DNA from: Podarcis cretensis
Lineage: Eukaryota
Length of the DNA: 64,000 nucleotides
Direction of reading: 5' to 3'
NCBI GenBank assembly: GCA_951804945.1
Contig: OX638151.1
Coordinates: 69,626,001-69,690,000 of the forward strand
In this document: positions 15,498-49,774 of the stretch, piece by piece
Numbering within the stretch: the first letter of the stretch is position 1
Layout of the letters: the number at the start of each line of letters is the position of its first letter
Notes under the pieces: model-generated
Databases searched by the model: none
Seen by the model: only the letters and a program-made list of their open reading frames with translations
What the model was told of the DNA's origin: nothing
Program-made: the position numbers and the translations under genes

Positions 15498-16015
15498 TAA
15501 GGCCACATCTGCATTGTACATTCAAGGCACTACTATGGTATTTTAAGTAATCACAATTTTCCACTAAAGAATTCTAGGAACTGTAGTTTGTTAAGGGTGC
15601 TGAGAGTTGTTAGGAGATCCTCTCCCAGAACTACGGTTCCAATAGTGGTTTAACAATCAGTGGTGGAGCATCATGCACCAGGGGGCACAGAGCAGCTGGG
15701 GGCGGGGCTGGCGCACGTCCTAGTAGCATGGGGTGTGTCCTGAGAGTGTGGCACACCACCCACAGGGGCTTGTGCACGTCCTGGGGGCGTGGTGCACTGC
15801 TTGCAGGGGTGTGGCATGCATCCTGGGGGTGTGGCACCCAGCACAGGGGGCACCCAGCACAAGGGGGCTTCCAGCCGCGATGGCACATCACCGGGATCGC
15901 GCTGCCGGGGGTAGTGCGCTCCCCCCGCACCCCTCTTCCTCTGCCAGTGTTAACAATCAATCCATCTTTGCAGAGAACTCTGGGAATTGCAGCTCTGTGG
16001 AGGAAATAGGGTCTC
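15498..16015. mobile_element. Older lizard MITE hosting the 15658-15949 insertion
   Basis: AAAGAATTCTAGGAACTGTAGTTTGTTAAGGGTGCTG and CTGGGAATTGCAGCTCTGTG motifs lie on both sides of the nested element and join once it is removed. Confidence 0.5.
15658..15949. mobile_element. GC-rich hAT-type MITE with 8-bp TSD
   Basis: TSD TTAACAAT at 15650-15657 and 15950-15957; ends CAGTGGTGGAG / CTCTGCCAGTG. Confidence 0.85.
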
Positions 16016-17327
16016 TTGCCCATTGCCATTGCAGGCATGTACCCTCACTACCCATGGACTGCAGTCTTCAGGCTAAAAAGTGCTTTCCACCCCTATCTGA
16101 AAGGAATATCAGGAGGACCATATAACCAGGGGACAACTTCTATAGCAGAGAAATTTGATGACTGTGTGCAGTTATCTAAACATGCTTCATTATTAAAATG
16201 TCAATCCTAAACATGCAACTAAGAAATAGACTGGGATTGGAGTGGTCATGTCTACACTTCAAAAGGGCTACCTTTATAGATTTCTGTAGTCTCTCTTACT
16301 TCCAGGCTTCTCTTTTTCCTGCCCCATCTTCTTTCCTGGTGTGATACGTTGTCTGTAGTTTACAGATGCTGGGCCATCCTGCAGGCTCTCTGATCTTCCA
16401 GGTTTCTCCTTTCTGTTATTTGTAGCAGAGACAGACACTGACTGCAGGATTCCATGAGTATTAACCTGTTATCCTGCTTTATGTTTTGTGAAGCTGTCAG
16501 AACACTGTAAGAGCTATCTGGCTGAATAGCCCACCCGACTTCCAGCAGTGGTCGTCTTTCCCAGGGATTAAACCTGAGGCCTTCCTATGTCCCTGCTGAG
16601 CTAGAACCCTTTCTTTCCTTCATTGCTTGCTTATACTCTGGAGTGTGTGTAAACTGAAGCTTGCACAGTACTTAGAATCCAGAAGAATAAAGATTCCTCT
16701 GAGAATGACATTGCTGAAAAGGAAAACTGACCTATTTGTTGCTTGGGGGCTCCTGGTTGGTTAGTCAGCTCTCAGAAATAATATCCAGCTCCTAGACATG
16801 TAACATGCAGGATCAATAAGAAACTAATCTTACTCCAGAGTGTAGCACTGTCTTGTTTTGCTGCATTGCTAAGCGATTCTACCCAGCTGGGTTTCAGGCC
16901 TTGCCGTTCATTTGCTGCTTTTAGACACATAGGATGCTCCCTGGTGAGTACCATGCTTCCATCTTAAAGATTTCCATTTCAGGGCGAAATGCAAAACCTG
17001 CTGAAACTCATCAACCTGGAGCTAAATTAAATGATGAAGGAGGCCGAGTCTTTTCATCTGTCACTTCATCTGGAATCTGTCATTGCCCATTATTTTCACT
17101 ATATGACCTGACACAGACTGACTGCATGTATAGGGATGCTAAAAAGTCCTTGTTAAGACTGAAGGGCCACGAAATACGATGTGGCATATCCTTGAGTGCA
17201 TGGACACTTCCCCTGCCTGCCACCTGGTCTCCTTTCCTCATACGTGGACTGATGGAAGCGATGGAGAAAGAGCACACAGTCACACATAGAAAATTCCATG
17301 TTACAGCAACTAGGTTCAGCATATGGT

Positions 17328-17547
17328 CAGTGGCAGAGCTTCATGCTCTGGCACCGGGGGGCGGAGAGCAGGCGGGGGTGTGGCTGGCGCGTGTCCCAGG
17401 CACATGGCACGCCACCCGCAGGGGTGTGGTGCGCAGCCTGGGGGTGTGGCACCCAGTGTGAGCAGGGGGAAGCCACAATGGCACCCCACTGGGATCGTGC
17501 TGCTGGGGGCGGTGCGCTCCCCCTGCCCCCCTCTTCCTCTGCCAGTG
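17328..17547. mobile_element. GC-rich hAT-type MITE, same family as 15658-15949
   Basis: TSD CATATGGT at 17320-17327 and 17548-17555; ends CAGTGGCAGAG / CTCTGCCAGTG; shared right end CCCTCTTCCTCTGCCAGTG. Confidence 0.85.
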
Positions 17548-18143
17548 CATATGGTCACAATTCAGAGATAGAACACATGCTCGTCATGTCTAACACCTCT
17601 GTGGTGTTAAAGGATACAGTACTAGGGAAGATGAAATGACCACATTCGTAGGCCTTCAGCTGGTGTGTCCTGACGCAGAGGCAGGTTGTGGAGTCATGCC
17701 GGGTGTGTCGCCGGAAAGCCCCTCCCCTCCCAGGTCCAAATGGGTGGGCAGCCCAACTGATGAAGCAGTCAGGAGGAGTGAGGCTGCCTAGCCAGGCCTG
17801 CAGGGCTTTCTGCACTGCCCCATCTCCTCACAGTTTGGCCCAGTCCTAAGATTCCACAGGCTGTCACTCACAGAGGAGAAGGGAATGAAGAGGGGATAGT
17901 TTTTCTCCTTTTCATTCTGTGCCACTGACAGAAGGATGTGGGCAGCAGAGCAGGGTCAAAGGGAGAGAGACTTCTTCCACTTTATTCACCTCTCCTCCAC
18001 AAGCAGCAGAGGTAATTTTAGGATTGGGGGAAGTTGTGGGGAGGGAGGAACTGTGAGGTAGTGATTAGCAACAGGGGTGGTGGTGATGGTGGACAAATGG
18101 TAGTGTTGAGGGTAGAAGAAGCTGTGAGGAAATAGGTTTGGAG

Positions 18144-19023
18144 CAGGGCCAGCCTGAGAGGCTTCGCCGCCACTGCCAAAGTCGCTGCTGGCTGCCAAAG
18201 CCACCTCCCCAGAGCTGCCTTGGTAGGGGAGGAAAAATAGCCAGAGAGGAGCAGGTGGCAGCAGCAGAGAAGATGGCAACAAACGGCACAGCACATTCCT
18301 CAAAGATCTGCCATTCCTCCCAACTGTCCCCCAATCTGAGGCAACTGCCTCATGGGTTGTCCAGCCCTGTGTCCTGAACGCCTGGCCCACCTGGCAGCAA
18401 GTCAGTATGCCAAGTCCAAAGTTGAAAGTTCGGGGGTCAATTTACACAAGCGAAGTCCAAACGGCAGGAGATGCAGTTCAGGGTCAATCCAAGTAGCCAA
18501 GTCTGAAGTCCAGCAGGCAGGAGACACTCCAGAGTCAACCCCATGGAGGTCCAGGAGCATCTAAGTCAAGGTTCATCAACACAGGCAGCTGAGCAGACAC
18601 AGCACCTCAGCTCTGTTGCACTTTTACACTTGGCTTGCACCCTCATCTGATCCAAGCCTACTCCAGCTGAGGAATCACACCCCTCCTCCCAGGGCTAGCG
18701 AGCCCCACCTGGCCAGCTAATGAACTGGGCTGTGAGCCCTTGCCTGCCTCACCCTCCTAGGGCACCCCTTCTGCTGATCTCCATGATCCCACCATATTTG
18801 TGGAGACAGGGGCCCCTCTGACTCTGGTAATGGGTCCTGCAGCTCTGGTTCCTGTGCCCTGACCTCCATCCCTTTGCCATCCTCTGTGACCCTGTGAGTA
18901 CTTCCTACACCAACCTCTCTCTCCCCCATCCCCAGCTTGCCCCGATGTGTCCCAGTCTTGACTACACCCCTCACCAGGATCCTCTTCCTCCTTGTTGTTG
19001 TCCTGCCTGTTCATGACACCCTG
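18144..19023. mobile_element. hAT-type MITE (core 18144-18369) interrupted at its right terminus by a solo LTR
   Basis: Ends CAGGGC / GCCCTG; TSD GTTTGGAG (18136-18143) vs GTTTGAAG (19024-19031). Confidence 0.65.
18370..19018 (-). mobile_element. Solo LTR (Gypsy-like), 649 bp
   Basis: TG...CA termini with inverted ends TGTCCTGAAC / GTTCATGACA (9 of 10 match); exact 5-bp TSD CCCTG at 18365-18369 and 19019-19023. Strand inferred only from a degenerate reverse TATA near 18621-18630. Confidence 0.75.
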
Positions 19024-19254
19024 GTTTGAAGGAGTTGTGTGAGAGATGTGAACAAGGGAGCCAAGGCAGCCTGTGGTGTTGGGAGCTGAGCTGCTGCCTC
19101 TGCATCAGGGAACTATCCTGGAGAGAAACATTTGCTGTGCCACTTGGAGGCTGCCTCTGATGCTGGGATTCACCTTCCCCACCCCACCCTGCCTTTTCCC
19201 CTTGTTGGCATTGCTGGACAGCACACACACCCCTCCCCCCGCAGTGCCATGACC

Positions 19255-19490
19255 TGACAAGGAACTGCATTCCAAGGGCCTTTCCCGGCTGGCGCAGCCT
19301 CTAAATGGTCCTCGCCATGGCTGGAAAAGTGGATTGTAGCCCTCTTTGCTTTGGGTTGTTCCCAAATAGGTATACTCCAACAGATGGTCTGGTGGTTCAA
19401 TGGTTATGCCAAAGACTGTGCCAAACATCCACATCTGTAATCAATAAAGGTGTGGCTAGCTTTGACCCAAATCAATGTTGTCCTGGGAGT
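19255..19490 (+). mobile_element. Possible DIRS/Ngaro-like terminal repeat fragment
   Basis: AATAAAGGTGTGGC...TGTTGTC resembles recalled squamate tyrosine-recombinase retroelement ends; boundaries uncertain. Confidence 0.3.
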
Positions 19491-21799
19491 CAGGCATTGT
19501 GGGAGAGGAGATGCCTTGTCCAGGCAAGTAGGGCTTACTGGAAGGGGGTGAGAATGGGGGAGAAAGGGGGAATGGGAAGTATGAAGGAATGGGGGCCTAA
19601 TGAGTATGCTCCAAAGGAGAATTTGGGGGACCCCCTAGAAAGAAACTAGTGAGAGTAGGCTAAAGGGGGGATAGTGGGGGCTGGAGAATAGAGACAGGGA
19701 GAAGGAAAATTGAGTGTATTAAGAAGATCAGTCATTGTGGAGGTGGGGAAACAATGGGTGAGGGGAAGACACTCTGCACATGTTTAGAAGAGGCTCTTTT
19801 GAGTAGACATGATTAGGTTGCTTGTCACACCTGGATAGGAGCTCCATGTTCACTTAGGTTTCCTGGGGGGGGGGACATGGATGCAGGAGTTAAAAGTTAT
19901 ATCACAATTAAAATATGGGAAGAGGACAAAGCTAGTTCCTGAAGGACAACTGTTAAAATGTCTATTGGTAAAGTGATGGGCACAGAGCAATATAGTATGC
20001 CAACTCAAATTGCTGCTGCACGGTCATTTGCCTTTGACAGTATAAAGTAGATGTGGTGTTTATTGTTGAACTAGATTTATGCTCATGTCAAATGGAAAAA
20101 TACTTTCACACTATTATCCTGGGGACAGTGGGGAGTGGGGAAGGAGATGGTTGAAATCCCCTTGGGGGATGGAGCAGGGAAATGGGGAAAGAGCTCAGCA
20201 GCCCCTCTGCTGATCCTCTTTCTAAACAGCACCACCCCAAAGCTGCTATTTTAAGCAAAATCTTGGATTTGGTCACATGCATCTGCATTTAACATCGAGA
20301 TGCAGGCTGTGATAGCATAATTGGATATGTTGAAAACCATTTAAATAAAGAGAATTATTATCCCAAGTAAAGATTATTAGCAATCGTGGGTTAGGAACAG
20401 CTACCCTTCAATGTATTTGTTTCCAGTCTAATTCTGATTACCGTTTTCCGTACTAGTTGTGTAGTTCATTCAGACACAGCGATGACCCCTGGGCTCATGT
20501 GAGCTGCTAGCAGAAAAAGGACACCAGATAAAAAGGGCACATTGTCTTGAATTCTGCTGTTCAATATGCTGCGGTTTTGGCGTACTGGAAAAAGAGTAAG
20601 GGGAATGACTGGTCACGTGTCAGTTTAGGGTCACCTTATTAACCCTAATAAACCGGACTTGATAACATAAATCCAACCCATACATTTCTATGGCAGCCAT
20701 TTAATTTTGGCGAAAGTGTTTCCATGCATGACCACATTAAAAATGCAATCTGTTCTTTGTCCTTTCCAGCAGTAGTATTGGGGTTGTGCAGTGAATCCTT
20801 AAAGCATGCTTTGGGATTATATTAATGCACAGACCTTTGAGACAAGCACAGACTTGTTTCCAGAAAGAATGAAATAGTAGCAGGCTTGGAGAAAAATAAT
20901 GGGCCATTCTGAATAACAGGCATTGCTGATGGAAATGACCTTTTCAGGTAAAAAGATATCCCAGCAGGTTATATGAAAGACAGCCCCCATCTTATGTTCT
21001 AGCTAGGCAAAAGTAGCTGGCTATATGCTTTCTCGTGCCCTTCGCACCAGGGTTTAATTTCAGGTGGAGGGTTGCAGCAAGATGGATTACCAACATCTTC
21101 CAGAACTCAGAGGCGTACCTAGGCTCCCTTGTGCACTTTGCAAGGAGCTGTATCGGCAACCCCCTCCCAAGAAAAAGAAAAACACTTTACTGCAATAGCC
21201 ACATTAGAAATTACTGCATTTTATGTGACCCAAGTACTTGAAGCATCTGGAATGAGGGCAAGGTGAGGAGAAGGAATGAAAATATTCACACACCCCAAAG
21301 AATATGTGTTTTTACTAGAACAGCAGAACAAACACCCTTATTTGCATATGAAGTGGAGGTACATAATTTTCAATTATAAGGAGAAGGATGGAAATTATGA
21401 GGTTTTATTTTAAAAAATGGTTGACATTTGAACTCTCTATATAGGCAACTCAAAGCAATTTACAAACAATATATTGGTATATAGAGAATGGAATAGATGG
21501 GTGCAAGCAGATGTTTCCTTCCCTCTCTTCTTTCTTGTGTTGCTGCAGGCTGTTTTTGTTTCTGCTATTATCATTACCTAGCTTAATATTTGTTTAGTAA
21601 TTATTAGGGTTGTGCAAACCAATTTGGTCAAATCTCGTTTCCTAAACAAAATTTAGACAATTCATGCAAAATCCAGACTGGGTTGCCCTAAGTTAATCCA
21701 GAGCAATCTGGAACTCAAAATACTCTCAAAAGAAGCCAGACTCCAGATTGTAGCAAAACATGAAAACAACGCCATTTAAGGAAAATTCCAGGGAAGGAG

Positions 21800-22282
21800 T
21801 GTGGCATTAGCCCTCCTAGGTGGGTCATAAGGAAAGAGGTAAATGAGTGGGAAGTCATTGGCCAGTGGGAACCCAAGGGGAGGAGTTAGAGTTAGAGTTG
21901 GAGTTGTTGGGAAGTTAGTTGGGAGTTGGAGAAGGAAGAGGGAGGATAAGTCTGTGGGTTGGTCGAGTTGTGTTGCGAGAGAGTGAGAGAAACTGATAGG
22001 AGGATTCAGATAGACAGTTGGGATAATCAGTTAGCAGTTATTAGGAAAGGTATAGGCCGGTATAGAAACTAAGATTAAGAAACTGACAAGAAAAATTATC
22101 TGAAACCATAAACTTGTTAAGGCTTATAAAATAAACTTGCTTATTTGATTTAATGTTAACAACTGTCTGGACTCTGTGTGTACCCAAGAGAAATGGGTTG
22201 GTGGCAGCGGGGAAGCAATCACAGTGGTGGCACAGGGGTCAATAGACCATCAAATGTCCGGGGACCCTGTGTGATCGCCACA
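21800..22282 (+). mobile_element. Solo LTR (Gypsy-like), 483 bp, nested in the hAT element
   Basis: Termini TGTGGC...GCCACA; flanks AGGAG / GGGAG (5-bp TSD, one mismatch); AATAAA at 22130-22135 sets the + orientation. Confidence 0.7.
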
Positions 22283-22649
22283 GGGAGGAGAAGAGTTTGA
22301 CTTCGATCATTGAGGGTCTCACCCAACACTGTGCAACCACAGTGCTTGCAAGGAAGAATGTGCTTGTGGAGGGGGAAAATATAGTGCTGTGTCCTGTTTT
22401 CTGTGGTTGTTGTTATTAGTTGTTTATCATTTTTGTTTCAGTTAGACTTGTGAGTACATTGTGCACAGTCCAGTACACTGGACACAGTCCATTCTTAGCA
22501 GCACACATTACAGTGTAATATTGCATATACAATATACACAGTCAGTATATATAAACAAGCACATATACTTTCTCTTTCTGGCTTGCTGCCACTTCTGCCA
22601 CCTCCTCTGTTGCATTTCAGTGTGATGGCTCAACTCTCCTTGCTATTTC

Positions 22650-23524
22650 AGCAATGTCATATGGACTCTGTGCTTTTGCCTTTTCTGACTGCCTGGGACC
22701 AGTTTCTGTGAAGCAGTAAGGCTGGACGCTTTGTCATGGTGTGCCAGCTCCCAGTTCCGGTGAATAATGCCAAGTTCATAAAGGTATTGCATAGCCAACC
22801 GTATCTGATAGAAATAAAACATGTAGGTCACTTCGTTTAATCTTGATGGGCACAGATCCTTGCCAAACAAGCTTCTCGCCTTCCATAAATTCCAAGAGAA
22901 TGTAAAGTCTATTTCTTCAAAGAAGTCTTTTTCTCTTGATTAGGCAGGGATGGTCAACCTTCTTCAAAATCTCCAGGCTGTTTCCACATTAAAAGGCTTG
23001 TCCTGATTCTCTGGTGAAACCTCTGCCATAAACCTTCACTGACTTACTGTATTTCATTCATGCAGCCTTTGTTGCAGGTGTCTTCAAAGGCTGACTTGAC
23101 TTCTCCACATGCAACACTGCCAAGAATCTTTTGATATGATACACTGGTTCCTGAGCTCTTAAGGGATGCTCTTACTGATGATCATTGGAGAACAATGCAG
23201 TCAAGGAGGGTATGACTTCATCAATGTGTGCCCAAGGACCTTTCCATTGAAGAAAGTCTCCCTTGACAGGGATGCTCTTGGTTTTGGCAGCAATTCTCCA
23301 GTCCACTCACTGACAATACCTTTTAGATCATAGCAGTTCCCCAAACTGTACACAGTAACTGCACCCCACCCCACCTTCCTGCCTTTCAGTGCAGTTCTTC
23401 AACTTTGAACTCAGGAGACTTCTGTGTCTCACACAAGCACAGTGTCCACACTGTTAAAGGGACTTCTGGCAACACTGTCTTCCTCAGACTTGGTTCCCTA
23501 GTTTTCCTCTGCCTGCCTGCTCAT
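22650..23524 (-). pseudogene. CHEK2: Intronless (processed) CHEK2-like checkpoint kinase pseudogene with stops, frameshifts and internal deletions
   Basis: Collinear minus-strand peptides: MSRQAEEN* (ATG 23524), FNSVDTVLV*D (Thr68 region), ETFFNGKVLG (FHA), ELRNQCIISK/ILGSVACGEVKSAFE (cf. [24 protein letters not shown]), FNVET/LEILKKVDHPCLIK/KDFFEE, YILLEFMEG/LFGK, RLNEVTYMFYFYQIRLAMQYLYELGIIHRN (cf. [30 protein letters not shown]). These span several exons in vertebrate CHEK2 but are contiguous here. Confidence 0.88.
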
Positions 23525-23915
23525 CTTTTGGTGCAACAATTGAAGTCTGCTAGCCTGTCTGGCATGTCTGTCTGTCTTTGACTTAGCTGCCTAGGAGATG
23601 CAGCTGCACCCTTCAATTGATTTCATTCTTTTACATCTTTATGAAACAGCCCAAACATGAGCACTTACAATAGCAGTAAACTGACGATTTTTATTTGTAT
23701 TTAAAACAGCCGCAACAAAATTTAGAAGTGGCTAGCATGTAAATCCCTGGATCCACTTGTATGCAATTGGGCAGGATTAATTCCATCTTGAGGGGCTACC
23801 GTGTCTCCAAATTTAATGCATTTATGTGAAAAACAGATTTGGAGTTCTATTTCGTCATTCATATGCAGGGTCTGAATTGGATCTGGGTCGATCTGAACTG
23901 AATCAAGTCCCAGTC

Positions 23916-24123
23916 CAGGGGTATCAACTTGAATAAAATATTAGGGGTGGGGGGGCTCAAGGGTGGGGGGGCTCAAGCCCCACTCTGCATAATCAATTAC
24001 AAGATGTGGTGTGCACACACCATTTGAATGGCCATGCCCATCAATTATTTGGGGGGCCCAGTCCCCTCAAATATTTTATTGGGGGGATGAAAGGACCTTG
24101 GCCACTAGGAGTTGGCTCCTATG
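23916..24123. mobile_element. hAT-type MITE nested in the 21605-24186 element
   Basis: Ends CAGGGGTATCAACT / AGTTGGCTCCTATG; flanks TCCCAGTC vs GCCCAATC (6 of 8 match); internal tandem duplication of GGGTGGGGGGGCTCAAG. Confidence 0.65.
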
Positions 24124-24585
24124 GCCCAATCCAAATTACTTAATCATCCTCTTAATTGGATTGGGACAGGGACATGCACAACCCTAGTAATAATTTTAGA
24201 TTGAATGGCATGCAAGTGATGGAAAGCATTAACAAAATTGAATCTATCTGTCCACCTCTGCCAAACACACACATTATAGCAGTGTAGCAAGATGTAACCT
24301 AGAGGGACCTATCTGAGAACTTCACTTAATACTCCATGCAAAGATGTGTAATTATCTCCATCAGCCACTATTTGTAATCAAACACACCTTTCAGAAACGT
24401 CAATCTGGGGCAGAGAATTGGGAGACAGCAATGGGAAACGTGTAAACAGATCCACAACCCTTTCCCCACTCACTGCTTCTTGGTTGCTGCAAATTGTCCT
24501 GTCCAGAAGAAACTTTTACTTAGATATAGCAGCTTTTGGGGACTATTAACAAGCTTTTGTATTGCTCACATATGTATTTAATTCC

Positions 24586-24624
<39 letters not shown>

Positions 24625-24681
24625 GAAGGAAGGAAGGAAGGAAGGAAGGAAGGAAGGAAGGAAGGAAGGAAGGAAGGAAGG
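24586..24681. repeat. Polypurine compound microsatellite (AAAG)n(AAGG)n
   Basis: Read directly from the sequence. Confidence 0.95.
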
Positions 24682-26854
24682 CTATTATTAATCTACCCTT
24701 TTCTTCAGATAAGTCTTATTTGTTCAGATGGGGCTGCTCAGGGTAAATGTAATTCTTACCATGCTGGCCAAAGAGAGCACTGGGGATTAATATGGAATGC
24801 AAATAGGCAGCCTCTGCTGATGCTGCTACATTCATGAGAGGTCTTCACTTTTCATAGTTCTGGAACACGTGCAATCAAATGGTACGTTTGCCAGCTTCCC
24901 TTGATACCTTTGGATAAAATTGTTACATGAGAGAATACATTTATCACAGCAGGATGGAGACACAAACCATAGGATGTCTCTCATGTGGCAATTCAGATCC
25001 TCAGCAATGATATGATCAAGAAAATGCTTGGATCAAAACTCTATAGGTGTTCATCTGACCACGCCCAGATCGTTCCACTTTGGATAATTACCTGCCTCTT
25101 CAATTAGCCTCACTGGAAGAAGAAAAACCCCTCATGAACTCAATATGAGCTATGTGAGCAACTGGGGGAAAAACTGATGCTGATGGCAATACTCTTCTGA
25201 TAATTAAAACAATTATGGGAGGCCACAGTATGTCTGGCACCAGTAGTAGATGATGTGTGTTGGGTGATAACGCCGAGGCCAGTGCCTCCCCCTCAATGCA
25301 GCGTTGCCTAGGATTCATCACTCCAGTGTCCCGTCACACTGATGTGACCCATATCCAAGGACATGAGCACACGACTAGCAGACTCCAAACAGAAGCTGAG
25401 CCTTGAGGTGTAACATCTAAGTCTAATTTATGGCGCACATCCCTGGTGCATTTTCACAATGCTGACCTTGCTGCCTCACTCTTCCCACTCTCAGGTATCA
25501 GGAGGTCAGGTAAATGCCATCACCCCACCCTACCATCCAGTATTGCCTGGTACACAGCTTCCCCCTCCCCATTGCAAAAAGGAGTAGGGAGAGTGTTGAG
25601 ACAAATTGGATAGGGGATAAATGGTCATGTTAGGCTTAGCTTTCATTTGTGTTCCAGTTAGTATTTCTAAATGCCCCCTAAAAATTCCCCACTGTCCTTC
25701 CCCATCCATCTCTCACTCTCTGATAATTTTTTCCTGCAAAACCCTGAATGATAGATAACTACTCCATTCTGTAATCTTTTTCCAATGGCAAATTATCACT
25801 GTGGGTGCCAAAAAGCAACACTGAGCATCCCTTGAAACACAAACCCTCCGCCTCTAATTCTGCATGTAATGGAATAACTAGAATTATCAATAAGTAGACC
25901 CTTTAAAACAATTGGGCGGAAAAGAACACTAGTTCATCAGCAGAAGGGCTTGTATAATTTATGGAGTTCTCAGAGGCATGAAACCCCAGAACCCAATGTT
26001 AGCCAAAGTGCAGTTTGATAACTGGAATACATAATAAGAATATCACTCAGCTTAATAAAAAGCAAGAGGTGTGATGTGTTAATATCTCTGGATCCATAGG
26101 TCTCTGGATGAATTTGAAGTCAAATGCAGAAGCCAGCATCTTAAAAGTTGGTAAGCCCTCTTGCTTTTCTCAACATTTGCAGGTGTGGAAGGCTGTGGTG
26201 ATTTGGTGAACATCCCCCAAAGTATGTATTAATTTTATTGTTAAGCAAATGTGGTACAGTATCACTTAGCCAACTGACTTGGATGTCCACACAGTATTAG
26301 ACTATTGGAATGATTAGATAAATAGGAACAATAACTGTATGTGTAGTTTTTCTGCATAGCTGTGTAGGTTTAAGGATCTCTGAGCTATGACTGGTCCAGA
26401 AGTCCTATACCTTCTGCATTGGGGTGTGGCATTCCATTACAAAAAGGCTTGTAATTTTATGGTGCTATTTCTTGCCTACTGAGTTGGCAAAGAACTCTTG
26501 CACATAGGGCAGACTGTAAGGTTGAATATAGTGCATAGATGGATTCCATCCTCTGTTTAATAGATAATGGCTCAGTTTATCTGAGAAGAGTGCTGATACA
26601 GAATAATGGAAGAATGATACAAGCTTCTTCCCTCTTGCACTCAGGCTCCATTGTAAACTAGTTTCTCCATTGTGACAGGGAGGAAATCTTATAAATCAGC
26701 TCTCAGCATGGTCAAACACTCATACAAAGGATCCAGTTCACACTGGAAGCTAATGGCATGATGAAAGAAAACCATTTGCACAACCCTCTCATATAGACGC
26801 TGCTGCAGTGCAGTGGACTGCACCTTGCATAAACTGCATGGTCTGTGCTGAGTG

Positions 26855-28086: not shown

Positions 28087-28971
28087 GAGCAGAAAGTGTT
28101 TCCACTCACACAAGGGGGCTCACCCAATTTTTGCCTACCTACCCCCAACACAGTCCTTTGTGTCATAGCTTGTCCTGTTCTACTGATGATCACATACAGT
28201 TGGGATATTGGGGAGCTTTTACCTTTGGGTTTTGTGAGTTCCAATATTTATTCCTATGATGAAAAAAATAGCATTCTAATATTTGTAAGATCCACACCCC
28301 CACACCAATTAAGAAATGTATGGCAATTCACTACAATAACCATCTCTTTATACAGCTGCAGGATTGCTAATCATACCTGGAAGAATATCAGTGTCAATTT
28401 ATTAAAGCATCAAAAATCACAAGAGAGAGGAGTTTGCCATAGCCTCAAATGTACTATGGCTAATTGGTCCTTGCCACAACAACAACCTGTGAGGAAATGA
28501 AGCAATTATATTAATTTTAGAAATGCCAGGAACTGTTTGAGTGACTCTTCTGAGGTCACACAAAGGAGGCAAAGGGCAAGGGTGATCTTATTAATCGCAA
28601 CACTCCGGCTCCTATTTCCTTGGCTGATCTACTGCGTGATTCTGGGGGTTGGGAATTATATGGTTTTGGTTACTTGCCAGGATTCAGTTACTGAAAACAA
28701 GAGCTCCAGGGAGCCTGCAAACAGTCTGTACAAATGGTTGCTTTGCAAACCCCATGAATGCACCAGCCCTTTTGCTCTGTGCCTCTAATGGCTCCCAAGA
28801 TGAGGCAGAGTGGAATGCAGCAGGTTGATTATGTGGACTTCTTTTATTCAATGAAAAATATACTTTGCATTACAGGCAGAGGCAGATCTCTCTTTTCTGT
28901 GCACTCTGTATATGTAAGCTGCAATATTAATCAAGTGCCCCTCCTTATTACCCTCTGAAGTAATGAAAATA

Positions 28972-29197
28972 CAGTGGTACCTCGGGTTACATACGCTTCA
29001 GGTTACAGACTCCACTAACCCAGAAATATTACCTCGGGTTAAGAACTTTGCCTCAGGATGAGAACAGAAATCGGGCTCCGGCGGCATGGCAGCAGCAGGA
29101 GGCCCCATTAGCTAAAGTGGTGCTTCAGGTTAAGAACAGTTTCAGGTTAGGAACGGACCTCCGGAACGAATTAAGTACTTAACCCGAGGTGCCACTG
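28972..29197 (+). mobile_element. pogo/Tigger-like MITE
   Basis: TA flanks; TIRs CAGTGGTACCTCGGGTTA / TAACCCGAGGTGCCACTG; close inverted copy at 45163-45388 (strand label is relative). Confidence 0.9.
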
Positions 29198-29794
29198 TAC
29201 AAGAAGAATGCCTCACTTTTAGGTAATCTGGGGGGAGGAAAAGCAACTTTAATGGTGCAATCAACTTGGTTATTTGTTGAAGAGCTTCTTCCCACACCAA
29301 CTGATCTGTACCTTGTGGTAGGTGTGTGAGGGGGTGGGGGTGGGACTCTTCTCTTTGTCCTGCTGGTGACCCACTAGGGCACTGGGATCGGATGGGCTTC
29401 TAATCATCTCAAAGCATTGAAGCTTTTTTTGGAGGGAGGGGGGCAAGCATTGAAGAAGAAGAAAGAACCAGAATAACTGAGACAGAACTAGCCTCTGCCC
29501 ATCTTAACTGTGGTAATTAGTTACATTCCATCACATGCTGTTATGCTTTACTTACATGTGATTAATTTCACACTTTTGCGTTCTGCCTTTGGCTGACAAT
29601 CTCCTCAGTCTTGGTGCTTGACAGATTCATTCTGTTTTCCCCCTTAGTCTTAAAACTCAACAAATGAAACCCGCCCAATAAAGTACTGACATATAAAATG
29701 ATGTTGAATTTAAAGGAGGGGAGAGAAGAAATTCCATAATGGATAATTGTCACCCGTAAAAAAAAAAAGTAGCCCAAAGGAGGTTAGAAAGAAC

Positions 29795-42565: not shown

Positions 42566-45162
42566 AATGTATACACCCACATTCACCAAGGGTACGACCT
42601 CTGAAGCTGTGTACACAAATAGCTGAGATGTACACCTGTACCGTTATTCACATATAACATTCAGTAAGTGAGCAGTCTGTATACACAACAGTTGAACTGC
42701 ACAAATCAACAACCCTTTCATCCAAACATTTGTCGTTGTGTCCAGACAGCTTGTACCTGCCTTCAGCATTATGTGTGGAGAAACCTAGTGTCAAAGTAGG
42801 ATTCAGCAGCCAGTCTGTTCAGCTGCTGCACATGGAATTGCAAGTGCTGTTCTTTCCTTAGTTTCAGAGAGACAAAATGTCATGGGCTGCTGCTGCAAGC
42901 CATTTTAAAAATATGTTATTCATATTAAAAATAAGAACTTATGATAACAGCAGGTGGCAGGCATAATCTTAGAAAGAGGGCTTCTCTTGCACACAGTAGT
43001 GACTGCATCTTCTAAAATGGTGCCTGCCAATCATGGCACACTTCGTTCATTTGAACTATTTATATACCACTTAAAACTGTAGTCTCTTAAAAAACAAATT
43101 ATGTTTGAAAATGGGATCAGGACTCCGGACACGATCCACCAGGGAACTCCCCATGCACATTCAAATGAACAACAGAAGCCCAAGAGCTCAAGTGTTGCTC
43201 TTGTGCAATTCCCATCTTTAGGGGGATTGTGGTCTCCATTGGCATTCATGCTGGTTTTATTGTCCAGAGGCTTTAAAATGTGTTTGTATTAGCTCATCAT
43301 TGAAGGAGGGCATCTCTATTTTATAAGCTTCACTTCTTGTGGTGAAGGAAAATCTCCAGCAATCCACAAATGGATTGAAAGTACATTACTTGTTTTATTG
43401 AGAGAGACGGTCTATAATTATCTATCTATATATCTGTGTATTTTTATCACTGATACTTTTTAAAGTTGTTTTCCCTGCTGTCAGAGACATTTTTATTTTC
43501 AGCATTTAGCACAAGCTTTTCTCTTTTAGAAAATCTTTCAGAAGCCCAGAGAATAAACTTGGAAATTATTATGGCTGCAACCCCAAACTCATTTATCTGC
43601 TCATAAATCTTGCTGGTCAATGGGTTTTCCAAATGTGCAAGATGATTTAGGATTGCATCATAAATTCTGTCTTTAAAATATGAAATATTGATCATTCTTG
43701 CTTGCCTCCAATGGGAACAACTTCCTTTCATTTGCTGCACCTTCTTCATTCTCAGCTCAAAACTAAAGTTGTGATTTATTTTGCATATTTCAATTAATCA
43801 ATTCCTTTCTGCAATTGTTTAAAAATACATTAAAACAAATTTCCTATTTTCTCTAGTAGCTTAGTTATGTGTAGAACTTTAAAAAGTGTAACTAGAAATG
43901 GTGTCGCAGTGTCTTGAATTGTATGTTTACAAACAGACCTGTGCCATCTTGAATTCAGACTAAAAGACAATGGATTGCATACTGCCATTGCTGCTGGGAA
44001 GCCAATGGGTATTACAAACTCCATTTCCTAGGCACTAAAGATTATTTCTGAACACCCTCAGAAGAATCTAGCAACTCCTTGGCCACAGATGTGAGGACAT
44101 CACTGCCACTGACCTTCATCCCAACCTGCCTTGCTGCTATCCTTGCCAGGGTGTGTTTTGGGAGAGAGGAGGATTGGAAGCAGAGTGGGAATGTTCATTC
44201 CAGTAGGAGCCAAGACCAGAGTTTGGACTCCACTCACAGTGGCTAGTTCATAATGGGGATTTAATTCTCACTCTTCCATAATTTGAACATCAGCATCCTC
44301 ACTCTACTTTTTCCATAAGCAGCAACAGTGAGCTAAAGTGGCTCAGGAATTGAGCCAGTGTTTCCTCTACTCCTGCCCTGTCTATGGAAACTTACATCAA
44401 CTGTTGCAAAGCCCAAACTTCTGAAGTTCACAGGCATTAAACTTTTCAAGAAGAAAAATGCTAATTTAATTGAGAATCGGGATTATTGCACAGTGAACTG
44501 GAACTTTTAGCTTATGAATCAAGCAGCACTCAAATGTATCTGTGTTTTAAGACTCGTACATCCTTTCTCTAATGAGACGCTACACATGCTAATGGAATCC
44601 CAAGGGAAATTTATATTCCCCCAGAGAACCAAGTCTCTAGCCATCTCTCACTTCTGAGCCCTTGAGGTTTCAGGGAGGGGGACCCTTATTCAATGGATTA
44701 CTTCTCAGTTACCATGTGAGTGTGACGGAGGGTCATGAAAAATATTTTACCACTGAGATCAGAAGGCACTTTCCTCTTGCTACTAGGATATTTCTAAGAC
44801 AAATGAGCTAAGCTTTCATGACATTTCTCTGCTGCCTACCTTATTAATATCAGAAAGTACTTCTTTGGTATCAAAGTGCAAGAAAGAAAGAATTGTGCTA
44901 TTAAGTCCTAAAAAGCTATGCGGCATAAAAATCATCATGAGATAAAAACAGGATGTCAGCCCCATCATTTCAAACAGCTGAAAGCATTGCACAGCTTCAG
45001 TTGCCTGAAGATGCTTCCCAGAGGCACAAAATAGAAAACATACATTGGAAAACTGGTGGGGGGTTTTTTGGAGGGGGGGGAGGCATATTAAGCTGCACAT
45101 AAAAATATTGTCGGTTCTTATGCAACACACTAGTTTTGCATACCAAATAGAGCAAGCCAGTA

Positions 45163-45388
45163 CAGTGGTACCTCGGCTTAAGTACTTAATTCGTTCTGGA
45201 GGTCTGTTCTTAACCTGAAACTGTTCTTAACCTGAAGCACCACTTTAGCTAATGGGGCCTCCTGCTGCTGCCACACCGCTGGAGCACGATTTCTGTTCTC
45301 ATCCTAAAGCAAAGTTCTTAACCCGAGGTACTATTTCTGGGTTAGCGGAGTCTGTAACCTGAAGCTTATGTAACGCGAGGTACCACTG
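45163..45388 (-). mobile_element. pogo/Tigger-like MITE, inverted sibling of 28972-29197
   Basis: TA flanks; TIRs CAGTGGTACCTCG / CGAGGTACCACTG; interior is the reverse complement of 28972-29197 with scattered substitutions. Confidence 0.9.
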
Positions 45389-46479
45389 TACAATGTCAAC
45401 CACTCAGTGAAATGCAACCGACCACTAGTCTTATATGCACTGGCAGCCCTTCTGGGGCTTTTCCTTGAGTGGAAAGTACAAGGTGGTTGTCAAAACATCC
45501 ATAATATGTGACTGGTTGGGTGCTGCAGTAAACTTTCTGGATCACTTTCTGGATCTGCAGGCCTGAGTCGGATTGATTGCTTAACGTGAATCAGGGAGAC
45601 CATGGTTCAAATCCCCAAAGGCATAATCTCATCCATTAGCAACATGAGAAGTGCTCTCCTGATTCAGACTAAAGGTTTATATATTCCTGGTTCCCAGCAA
45701 TCCAGTATTATAATGGTGAAGCTCACTAGAATTTTCATCCACAGTAGGTGTCATCATTACACATGCTATGATCATATTTTGAATTTCCCCTGTAAACCTT
45801 GTATTCAGATTTTCCTGAAGCTAATAAAAGGTACTCCCTGTAATCCACTAAAAATATTTTCTTTTTAGGTTTTGAATTCCACATATGCTGCTGTCTCAAT
45901 TTCTGGAAGGTATTTTTTTATAGGGCTCTATTTGTTTCTTGGTTATGGGCTATGTTACATTTTTATAATCTGCAAATTAGATTATGTGTGGAGAATCTGT
46001 GAATAGTGTTGGAATTAGCACTTGTTTTGTCATCAAGGTCTAAAATACTCCAATGAGACAAAGCAAAGCCCTCATTTTGTAAGTAAATGAAGCGTTGCTG
46101 AAGGATAAACTAGGAAATCAAAAGGTTGCTAACAATATATGACATGTTCCTTCCCAAAATAGCAAACTGGCTATTTCTACAGAGGAAGCAAAAGGATGAT
46201 GAAAGTGCCCTCTGTCTTTTAAGAAAGAAACTGAACAATAGAGAGGTCAGAAGGGGAGGAGGGGAGAGACAGAAGACAAAGCTCTCAAAGAGCTGGCAAA
46301 CCACAAGTCATAAAATAATATGAATTATTCAGACCTTGTTGATTGTGCACAGGAAGTTTGCAAGTTGCATAGAAAAGGTACAAAGGGTTAGAAATGGAAC
46401 CAAATATTCCCTCTTACGCTTTGAGGTAGGCTATTTTTAATGAGTTTGATTTGAACATGATGCTAAACCATAATAACAT

Positions 46480-49516: not shown

Positions 49517-49774
49517 CAGTACTTTTTCCTGACAAAACTGACCAGTACTCAATACCAGTACCTTTTTTTGCTTCCAGTCCACCCCCCTTTGTGAGGGGAG
49601 TGTTTTTGCCACCTCGTAGCTCCGTGAAAGGGAGTTATGAGGTGGCAAAAACACTCCCCTCACAAAGGGGGATGGAGTGGCAGCAAAAAAAGGTACTGGT
49701 ATTGAGTACTAGTCAGTTTTGTCCCCTTTGTGAGGGGAGTGTTTTTGCCACCTCATAACTCCCTTTCACGGAGC
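49517..49774. repeat. Palindromic MITE-like element (93-bp arms) with an extra exact inverted copy; right end missing
   Basis: 49531-49623 pairs with 49631-49723 (6 mismatches, 7-nt loop GTGAAAG); 49723-49774 is the exact reverse complement of 49619-49670. Confidence 0.85.

What the first reader, a model, noticed from the sequence alone, without database searches (positions are those of the whole stretch)
21605..24186. hAT-type DNA transposon whose cargo is an intronless CHEK2-like kinase gene (candidate Pack-TIR)
Seen: perfect 12-bp TIRs and an 8-bp TSD (7 of 8 match) enclose 2.58 kb. After removing a nested solo LTR and a MITE, about 1.9 kb remains, and roughly half of that is a processed CHEK2-like sequence running from its ATG to a possible C-terminal remnant. 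No transposase is visible. Established: 8-bp TSDs typify hAT elements, TIR elements carrying host gene pieces are known (Pack-MULEs in plants, Pack-TIRs in animals), and CHK2 mediates the germline response to double-strand breaks, including transposon-induced ones. Inference: either a retrocopy landed once in a resident MITE, or a hAT family captured and amplified a DNA-damage checkpoint kinase cDNA. The second case would be a transposon carrying a possible decoy or modulator of the checkpoint that polices it.
Basis: partly seen in the sequence, partly recalled or inferred. Interest (0 to 1): 0.82.

Follow-up and report, generated by a model that had tools for sequence, protein, structure and literature searches.

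The report
Dead CHEK2 retrocopy inside hAT ends
A decayed, intron-less fragment of the checkpoint-kinase gene CHEK2 lies between the ends of an old cut-and-paste (hAT-type) transposon in a lacertid lizard genome, but it is one dead copy shared by related species, not a transposon family that picked up and spread the gene.

Summary
The structure is real. There are perfect 12-bp inverted ends (TAGGGTTGTGCA) and an 8-bp target duplication (GTAATTAT/GTAATAAT) that fits the hAT target pattern. A high-copy solo LTR and a high-copy MITE are nested inside. A CHK2-like sequence lies on the minus strand.

The "gene" is a wreck. Only CHK2 residues ~27-342 are recognisable, in window 23606-22754. The path has 10 frameshifts and 6 stops, part of the FHA domain is missing, and nothing follows the HRD motif. 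Neither the ATG nor the C-terminal remnant could be confirmed. An A-rich tract 310 bp downstream on the gene strand looks like a poly(A) relic.

Contigs of four lacertid species show the arms and the CHEK2 piece at single-contig depth (>=80% likeness). The piece sits at the same site in all four and diverges as fast as the flanks. One species lacks the solo LTR.

So there is no amplified Pack-hAT family and no plausible decoy. The most likely history is a one-off retrocopy in a resident non-autonomous hAT (about 0.6). Chance ends, movement as cargo, and cDNA gap-filling remain possible.

Earlier notes of this scan report multi-copy cargo-bearing hAT elements elsewhere in this genome; this is not one of them. 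The lizard parent gene could not be obtained.

The parts
21597..21604 (.). Left copy of the 8-bp target-site duplication, GTAATTAT
   Evidence: Matches 24187-24194 at 7 of 8. T at position 2 and A at position 7 fit the hAT target pattern nTnnnnAn (PMC10368747).
21605..21616 (+). Left terminal inverted repeat, TAGGGTTGTGCA
   Evidence: Perfect reverse complement of 24175-24186.
21617..21799 (.). Left arm of the element; non-coding and single copy
   Evidence: Laid by one contig per species at >=80% likeness. No similarity to the right arm beyond the TIR. Weak enrichment of AATCCA/CCAGA-type k-mers.
21800..22282 (+). Nested solo LTR, 483 bp, TG...CA with inverted ends TGTGGC/GCCACA; a later insertion
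   Evidence: Summed depth is 600-2300 times single copy. Many contigs end at 22282. The organism E contig joins 21792 to 22282, so the LTR is absent there.
22283..22386 (.). Continuation of the left arm, or the target DNA of the retrocopy; unassigned and single copy
   Evidence: Single-contig depth once the LTR edge is discounted. No protein or repeat match.
22387..22445 (-). A-rich tract on the gene strand (60% A over 48 nt); probable decayed poly(A) tail of the retrocopy
   Evidence: One of only 9 such A- or T-rich tracts in 64 kb. It has the right orientation and lies 310 bp downstream of the last CHK2 codon.
22446..22753 (-). Unassigned 308 bp between the kinase break and the A-rich tract. 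It may be the 3' end of the source transcript after an internal deletion.
   Evidence: No frame matches the C-terminal part of 120 mammalian CHK2 proteins better than shuffles do. Around 22463 the depth is 2-3 times single copy (table 4).
22754..23164 (-). CHK2 kinase N-lobe up to the HRD motif (residues 208-342 of beaver CHK2, P0004), disabled
   Evidence: 130 codons are aligned at 56% identity, with 6 frameshifts and 2 stops. PDB phmmer scores 5e-9 to human CHK2. Pfam Pkinase scores only 14.5 bits, below its cut-off.
23165..23442 (-). Remains of the FHA-domain region (residues ~90-207), with about 38 residues missing
   Evidence: Frameshift-aware alignment gives 3 frameshifts, two in-path stops, and deletions of residues 128-141 and 190-206. 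The pieces alone find nothing in PDB or Pfam.
23443..23606 (-). Weak likeness to the N-terminal S/Q-rich region (residues ~27-89). The 5' limit and the start codon are uncertain.
   Evidence: Low-complexity alignment with 2 stops and 1 frameshift.
23607..23915 (.). Right arm of the element (inner part); single copy and non-coding
   Evidence: Single-contig depth in four species.
23916..24123 (.). Nested high-copy MITE (CAGGGG... end) with its own 8-bp duplication
   Evidence: Summed depth is about 1000 times single copy. Hundreds of contigs end at 24123/24124. The flanks match 6-7 of 8, depending on the register. Present in organisms A, C and E.
24124..24174 (.). Right arm (outer part)
   Evidence: Contigs of all four species run from here across the right end into the flank (records 8, 16, 23, 31).
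24175..24186 (-). Right terminal inverted repeat, TGCACAACCCTA
   Evidence: Perfect complement of the left TIR.
24187..24194 (.). Right copy of the target-site duplication, GTAATAAT
   Evidence: 7 of 8 with 21597-21604.

Best explanation
This is a neutral genomic fossil built in layers.

1. A roughly 670-bp non-autonomous hAT-type element inserted here and duplicated the 8-bp target GTAATWAT.
2. A spliced CHEK2 mRNA was reverse-transcribed into the middle of that element, antisense to the window. It left an intron-less partial copy (N-terminus to the HRD motif) and an A-rich tail relic.
3. The copy then decayed freely.
4. A hAT-type MITE inserted before the sampled species split.
5. An LTR retroelement inserted and collapsed to a solo LTR in the lineage of organisms A and C only.

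The composite never multiplied and does nothing today.

Shown: the ends, the nested inserts and their order, single-copy status, orthologous presence in four species, and the disablement of the CHK2 reading frame.

Inferred: that the retrocopy arrived after the hAT element, and that a LINE enzyme made it.
For: - TIR and TSD are real, and this is the only such pair in the window. The TSD fits nTnnnnAn.
- CHK2 residues 27-342 lie contiguously in 853 bp without intron-sized gaps. Vertebrate CHEK2 is a multi-exon gene (established knowledge).
- There are 10 frameshifts and 6 stops. 17 of 56 residues invariant between mammal and invertebrate CHK2 are changed, which implies roughly 0.10-0.16 substitutions per site.
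- An A-rich tract lies downstream on the same strand.
- Arms and cargo are laid by one contig per species at >=80% likeness, while the LTR and MITE are laid by thousands.
- Both junctions are bridged in organisms A, C and E, and the right junction in F as well (table 8).
- Between-species divergence is the same inside and outside the CHK2 piece.
- Neither the whole-library search nor the word search finds any product like this piece.
Against: - The ends look too fresh for the cargo. One change in 40 TIR+TSD bases is unlikely at about 0.10-0.14 decay per site (binomial P about 0.02-0.08).
- No target duplication flanks the retrocopy itself.
- A LINE-made retrocopy normally keeps its 3' end. Here the 3' half of the coding sequence is missing. 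By my recollection of the human exon map, the break after HRD lies inside an exon.
- The arms have no relative at >=80% in four genomes and share nothing with each other beyond 12 bp. Their hAT identity therefore rests on TIR, TSD and weak k-mer enrichment.
- The decay estimate uses mammalian and invertebrate references, not the lizard parent.
Confidence: 0.6

Rival explanations
1. The ends are a coincidence. An old CHEK2 processed pseudogene sits in ordinary unique DNA, and a chance 12-bp inverted pair with similar AT-rich 8-mers beside it mimics a hAT element.
For: - 126 perfect 12-mer inverted pairs occur within 6 kb in this window, so the TIR alone means little.
- The arms have no relatives at >=80% in four genomes and no mutual similarity beyond 12 bp.
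- Intact ends next to a 10-16% decayed cargo need no special pleading under chance.
- Near matches to the TIR elsewhere in the window are no more frequent than in shuffles: 11 against 6.9.
Against: - Only 0.02 TIR+TSD hits per shuffled window, and about 0.06 expected from the real number of pairs.
- The end also starts TAGGG, as Ac-type hAT ends do (my knowledge).
- The TSD fits nTnnnnAn.
- The pair encloses the retrocopy symmetrically, with arms of about 300 and 370 bp.
- Related k-mers are mildly enriched in both arms.
Confidence: 0.13
2. The element moved as cargo, making it a single-copy Pack-type hAT. The CHEK2 cDNA piece entered a non-autonomous hAT at another locus, aged there, and the composite then transposed by cut-and-paste to this site. 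That move created a fresh 8-bp duplication and left no second copy.
For: - The TSD is nearly intact (1 change in 16 bases), while the cargo has decayed about 10-16%.
- Single copy is what pure cut-and-paste leaves.
- Earlier notes of this scan report cargo-bearing hAT families in the same genome (untested here).
Against: - The TIRs would have had to stay perfect through the same long decay. The age argument therefore favours this reading over the resident-hAT reading only about three-fold, through the TSD.
- hAT elements need about 150-220 bp of family-specific subterminal sequence to move (PMC10368747). Yet no relative of either arm exists at >=80% in four genomes.
- No donor or sister copy was found.
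Confidence: 0.12
3. cDNA gap-filling. A double-strand break inside a resident hAT element, for instance after abortive excision, was repaired with a CHEK2 cDNA or mRNA as filler. This is the transposition-independent route proposed for most single-copy Pack-TIRs.
For: - Tan et al. find most animal Pack-TIRs are single-copy, with breakpoints biased to internal regions of the element, and that they arise without transposition (PMC8277862).
- Here the filler sits in the interior.
- No retrocopy TSD was found.
- The 3' limit of CHK2 likeness falls mid-kinase.
Against: - An A-rich tail relic in the right orientation suggests ordinary retroposition.
- The same paper reports a cis bias for fillers and removes intron-less copies as retroduplicates.
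- Microhomology at the breakpoints cannot be assessed without the parent sequence.
Confidence: 0.1
4. An active or once-amplified Pack-hAT family carries a CHK2 decoy that modulates the checkpoint against transposon damage.
For: Only the layout (TIR, TSD, CHK2-like interior) and the general fact that CHK2 signals DNA breaks.
Against: - Single copy in four species at >=80% likeness.
- 10 frameshifts and 6 stops. The FHA domain is partly deleted and the catalytic half of the kinase is absent.
- Divergence equals that of the flanks.
- No run listed as holding the stretch is on record as RNA.
- No similar product in 5.8 billion clustered proteins.
Confidence: 0.02

Closest known systems
Processed pseudogene (LINE-mediated retrocopy of a spliced mRNA)
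   Same: An intron-less copy of a multi-exon gene, with an A-rich tract downstream on the gene strand. It is a single locus, decays neutrally and has many frameshifts and stops.
   Different: It keeps the 5' part of the coding sequence and lacks the 3' half. No flanking direct repeat is visible. It lies exactly between hAT-like ends.
Pack-TIR elements of animals (Tan et al. 2021, PMC8277862), including Pack-hAT-N8_XT of Xenopus
   Same: TIRs and a TSD enclose host-gene-derived sequence without a transposase. It is single-copy, like about 99% of the cases in that study.
   Different: The interior is an intron-less copy of a multi-exon gene, a class that the paper's pipeline discards as retroduplicates. 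No family consensus is available for the arms, and the parental copy was not located.
ARF6 retrogene inside a MER20 (hAT-Charlie) element in human, discussed in PMC8277862
   Same: A retrogene-derived sequence lies within a hAT-superfamily non-autonomous element. The authors themselves note it could simply reflect retroposition into the element.
   Different: MER20 is a well-defined high-copy family, and that copy is nearly complete and transcribed. Here the arms have no detectable family and the cargo is a fragment.
Multi-copy cargo-bearing hAT elements noted by this scan in the same genome (GNAL, PGAM5, SPR first-exon carriers)
   Same: Same genome and same superfamily-type ends with an 8-bp duplication. 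The interior is derived from a host gene.
   Different: Those are reported as dozens to thousands of copies carrying genomic (exon plus flank) DNA. This one is a single copy carrying RNA-derived DNA. I did not re-test those notes.

Membership tests
hAT superfamily, non-autonomous element | 8-bp target-site duplication | tested here: met
   GTAATTAT / GTAATAAT, 7 of 8. It is the only such case among 126 inverted 12-mer pairs in the window.
hAT superfamily, non-autonomous element | Target preference nTnnnnAn | tested here: met
   T at position 2 and A at position 7 in both copies. The pattern is stated for Hermes in PMC10368747.
hAT superfamily, non-autonomous element | Short terminal inverted repeats of the YARNG type | tested here: met
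   12/12 perfect, starting TAGGG. The consensus is recalled from my own knowledge of Ac/hobo/Hermes ends.
hAT superfamily, non-autonomous element | Subterminal repeats, or 150-220 bp ends shared with family members | tested here: not met
   No contig other than the orthologue lies on either arm at >=80% likeness in four lacertid genomes. k-mer enrichment in the arms is weak. Older relatives below 80% cannot be excluded.
hAT superfamily, non-autonomous element | Empty orthologous site in a relative | tested here: not met
   All four species laid carry the element. More distant species could not be examined.
Pack-TIR (Tan et al. 2021) | TIRs and TSD enclose sequence derived from a host gene, without a transposase | tested here: met
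Pack-TIR (Tan et al. 2021) | The captured sequence is not an intron-less copy of a multi-exon parent (a control against retroduplicates) | tested here: not met
   CHK2 residues 27-342 lie in 853 contiguous bases. The rule is quoted from the paper's methods.
Pack-TIR (Tan et al. 2021) | Flanking TE parts match a known TIR-TE consensus; parental locus identified | not testable with these tools
Mobile (multi-copy) Pack family | Two or more copies with the same ends and cargo and different TSDs | tested here: not met
   Single-contig depth over arms and cargo in four species. No second copy in the window.
Processed pseudogene | Lacks the parent's introns | tested here: met
   Contiguous frameshift-aware alignment. 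The multi-exon structure of vertebrate CHEK2 is established knowledge and was not re-tested.
Processed pseudogene | 3' poly(A) tract | tested here: inconclusive
   A tract with 60% A over 48 nt lies at 22387-22445 on the gene strand, one of 9 such tracts in 64 kb. It is 310 bp from the last recognised codon, and the stretch between is unassigned.
Processed pseudogene | Flanking direct repeats of its own | tested here: not met
   The best direct match (22302-22323 / 23781-23800, score 20) lies within the range of shuffles. At this age such repeats may have decayed.
CHK2 (CHEK2) kinase | FHA domain followed by a protein kinase domain most similar to CHK2 | tested here: met
   CHK2 is the best PDB match by six orders of magnitude over PLK1. 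Only CHK2 representatives were found in 1.84 billion proteins. Both domains are fragmentary, and Pfam Pkinase scores 14.5 bits against a cut-off of 31.7.

The most novel reading that the evidence does not exclude
A hAT element mobilised an RNA-derived fragment of the DNA-damage checkpoint kinase. The CHEK2 cDNA piece entered a non-autonomous hAT elsewhere, and the composite later transposed here, which would explain why the target duplication looks younger than the cargo. That would be a retrocopy-carrying, transposition-competent Pack-hAT in an amniote, a class that published screens exclude by design.
Probability: 0.12. Interest if true: 0.45.

Novelty: new member of a known kind. Interest (0 to 1): 0.17.

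Why it matters
It matters little in itself. This is a dead, single-copy pseudogene fragment with no sign of constraint, expression or spread, so the attractive idea of a transposon carrying a decoy of the checkpoint that polices it does not hold here.

It has two modest uses:
- It is a clean worked example of why an intron-less host-gene piece between TIRs should not be called a Pack-TIR until copy number and retrocopy hallmarks have been checked.
- It is a datable layered insertion (hAT, then retrocopy, then MITE, then a lineage-specific solo LTR) that could serve as a phylogenetic marker among lacertid lizards.

Tried and rejected
- blastn of the element against the whole window found no other copy of any part.
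- Near matches of the TIR elsewhere in the window (20779, 26788 and others) have no matching duplications and are no more frequent than in shuffles.
- Arm-to-arm alignment found nothing beyond the 12-bp TIR. The 13-bp direct repeat AACAAAATTTAGA (21645 / 23714) is within shuffle range.
- The search for a retrocopy TSD found nothing significant.
- The short FHA-region pieces find nothing in PDB or Pfam on their own.
That tail is poorly conserved, so the result is inconclusive rather than negative.
- I tried three ways to get the lizard parent gene:
  - The whole-library phmmer returned only a mammalian CHK2 representative.
  - The word search with that representative listed 120 mammals and no squamate.
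  - The word search with the 98-aa piece found no candidate.
- No listed holder of the stretch is on record as RNA, so expression is untested.
- A search of papers for the TIR sequence found nothing.
- The scan's index holds no look-alike of the left arm.
- ARAGORN found no tRNA-like SINE head in 20500-25000.
Pieces were searched apart, by reference. The frameshift-aware alignment was done only inside a script, against a protein that a tool had returned.

Full report
**What is there**

The stretch 21605-24186 begins with TAGGGTTGTGCA and ends with its exact reverse complement. The 8 bases outside each end are GTAATTAT and GTAATAAT.

A 12-bp inverted pair alone is weak evidence. The window holds 126 perfect 12-mer inverted pairs within 6 kb of each other. 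This is the only one whose flanks match at 7 of 8 or better, and block-shuffled windows give 0.02 such cases.

Both copies of the duplication carry T at position 2 and A at position 7. That is the nTnnnnAn preference described for the hAT transposase Hermes (PMC10368747). The end also starts TAGGG like Ac-type ends (my knowledge).

Beyond the 12 bp the two arms share nothing. A set of related k-mers (AATCCA, CCAGA, ATTGG) is only mildly enriched in them. No ORF in the element exceeds 75 codons, so no transposase is present.

**The nested inserts**

I laid Logan contigs of four runs on 21000-24800 at >=80% likeness. The runs were organism A (identical to the window) and organisms C, E and F.

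- 21762-22282 and about 23917-24123 carry summed depths hundreds to thousands of times the single-copy level. Hundreds of contigs end at 22282 and at 24123/24124.
- The first insert is a 483-bp TG...CA solo LTR with inverted tips.
- The second is a MITE with a CAGGGG-type end and its own 8-bp duplication, matching 6-7 of 8 depending on the register.
- A 2078-base contig of organism E runs from 21792 straight into 22282. The LTR is therefore absent there and is a later, lineage-specific insertion. Contigs of A and C enter the LTR from both sides.
- The MITE is present in A, C and E.

**The CHEK2 piece**

On the minus strand, the stop-free piece 22646-22939 matches the human CHK2 kinase domain at 5e-9, against 0.0085 for PLK1. 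The piece holding the glycine loop matches CHK2 weakly. A phmmer scan of 1.84 billion representatives returns only CHK2-type kinases plus one spurious repeat protein.

I ran a frameshift-aware alignment to a full-length mammalian CHK2 (P0004, beaver). It places residues 27-342 on window 23606-22754, which is 853 contiguous bases with no intron-sized gap. Vertebrate CHEK2 is a multi-exon gene (established knowledge), so the copy is RNA-derived.

It is badly damaged:
- 10 frameshifts and 6 stops lie along the path.
- About 38 residues of the FHA domain are missing.
- Likeness ends at the HRD motif, so the catalytic half of the kinase is absent.
- Pfam's kinase model scores 14.5 bits against a cut-off of 31.7.

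That tail is poorly conserved, so this result is inconclusive.

Downstream on the gene strand, 22387-22445 is 60% A. It is one of only nine such tracts in 64 kb, and I read it as a decayed poly(A) tail. No direct repeat flanks the retrocopy.

**Copy number and history**

Outside the LTR and the MITE, every bin from 21381 to 24555 is laid at the depth of a single contig in all four species, apart from short bumps. At >=80% likeness, neither the arms nor the CHEK2 piece has a second copy in any of these genomes.

The element sits at the same site in all four:
- Contigs bridge both junctions in A, C and E.
- Contigs bridge the right junction in F.
- In F, the two contigs at the left junction stop at 21601-21606 with unmatched tails. 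I take this for a lineage-specific insertion at that point, but I could not see the letters.

Divergence from the window is alike inside and outside the CHEK2 piece. In organism C it is 1.6% inside against 1.2-1.5% outside. In organism E it is 3.5% inside against 2.9-3.7% outside. There is no sign of constraint. No listed holder of the stretch is on record as RNA. The word search with the 98-aa piece finds no similar product at all.

**Ages**

Of 56 residues in the kinase part that are identical between a mammal (P0004) and an invertebrate CHK2 (P0003), 17 are changed. That implies very roughly 0.10-0.16 substitutions per site.

The ends show one change in 40 bases. If they were as old as the cargo, this would have a probability of about 0.02-0.08.

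This mild tension is the one thing that speaks for the composite having moved here as a unit. But the TIRs would have had to survive the same decay before such a move, so only the TSD discriminates, by about three-fold. A hAT able to move also needs 150-220 bp of family-specific ends, and no relative of these arms exists at >=80%.

**Weighing the readings**

| Reading | Weight |
|---|---|
| Retrocopy landed once in a resident, old, non-autonomous hAT | ~0.6 |
| Chance ends around an ordinary processed pseudogene | ~0.13 |
| Moved as cargo (single-copy Pack-hAT) | ~0.12 |
| cDNA gap-filling at a break in a resident element | ~0.1 |
| Amplified family carrying a checkpoint decoy | ~0.02 |

The gap-filling route is the one Tan et al. 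propose for most single-copy Pack-TIRs (PMC8277862). The last reading is refuted for these four genomes.

**Comparison with the known**

The closest kinds are the processed pseudogene and the animal Pack-TIR. Membership of the latter fails on a stated criterion: the defining screen discards intron-less copies of multi-exon genes as retroduplicates. The same paper treats the similar case of an ARF6 retrogene inside MER20 as possibly plain retroposition.

Earlier notes of this scan describe multi-copy hAT elements in this genome carrying genomic first-exon pieces of GNAL, PGAM5 and SPR. I did not re-test them. This element differs in being single-copy and RNA-derived.

**Limits**

- The lizard CHEK2 gene was not obtained.
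- As a result the 3' boundary, the exact divergence, and microhomology at the breakpoints are all untested.
- Contigs at >=80% cannot show an old family whose members differ by more than 20%.

**Verdict**

This is an ordinary layered fossil of low interest.

Noticed in passing
window 21793-22281: The solo LTR is present in organisms A and C but absent from a contig of organism E that joins 21792 to 22282. The 489-bp skip equals the LTR plus about one target copy. This is a clean presence/absence marker among these lizards.
   Followed up: partly
window 21601-21606: In organism F the two contigs that meet at the left end of the element both stop here, with 22-26 unmatched letters beyond. Six bases are shared by both. 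This may be a lineage-specific insertion right at the TIR boundary. The letters were not shown.
   Followed up: no
window 22450-22545: A 16-nt motif (TACAYTGKRCACAGTC) occurs three times. The depth near 22463 is 2-3 times single copy in all four species, so one or two other loci share this short stretch. One of them could be the CHEK2 3' UTR.
   Followed up: no
window 23942-24066: Many other copies of the nested MITE replace its middle with other sequence (joints 23942/23947 to 24014 or 24063). The family therefore has a variable core between conserved ends.
   Followed up: no
window 21000-21253: A moderately repeated element lies just upstream, with summed depth about 30-130 times single copy in all four species. 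It was not identified.
   Followed up: no
window 24562-24690: A (GAAAG/GAAGG)n microsatellite lies here. Read laying skipped 24578-24687 as a repeat, and contigs of all species end at 24577.
   Followed up: no
window 28970-29200 and 45160-45390; 49531-49774: A 231-bp inverted pair at 93.5% identity lies 16 kb apart. A roughly 240-bp palindrome (91% over its 193-bp core) lies at 49.5-49.8 kb. These are probably young MITE copies.
   Followed up: no
window 15600-19650: A GC-rich block (up to 53% GC) holds a 76%-identical repeat at 15803-15949 and 17418-17547. It may be a CpG island or a repeat cluster, and it ends about 2 kb upstream of the element.
   Followed up: no
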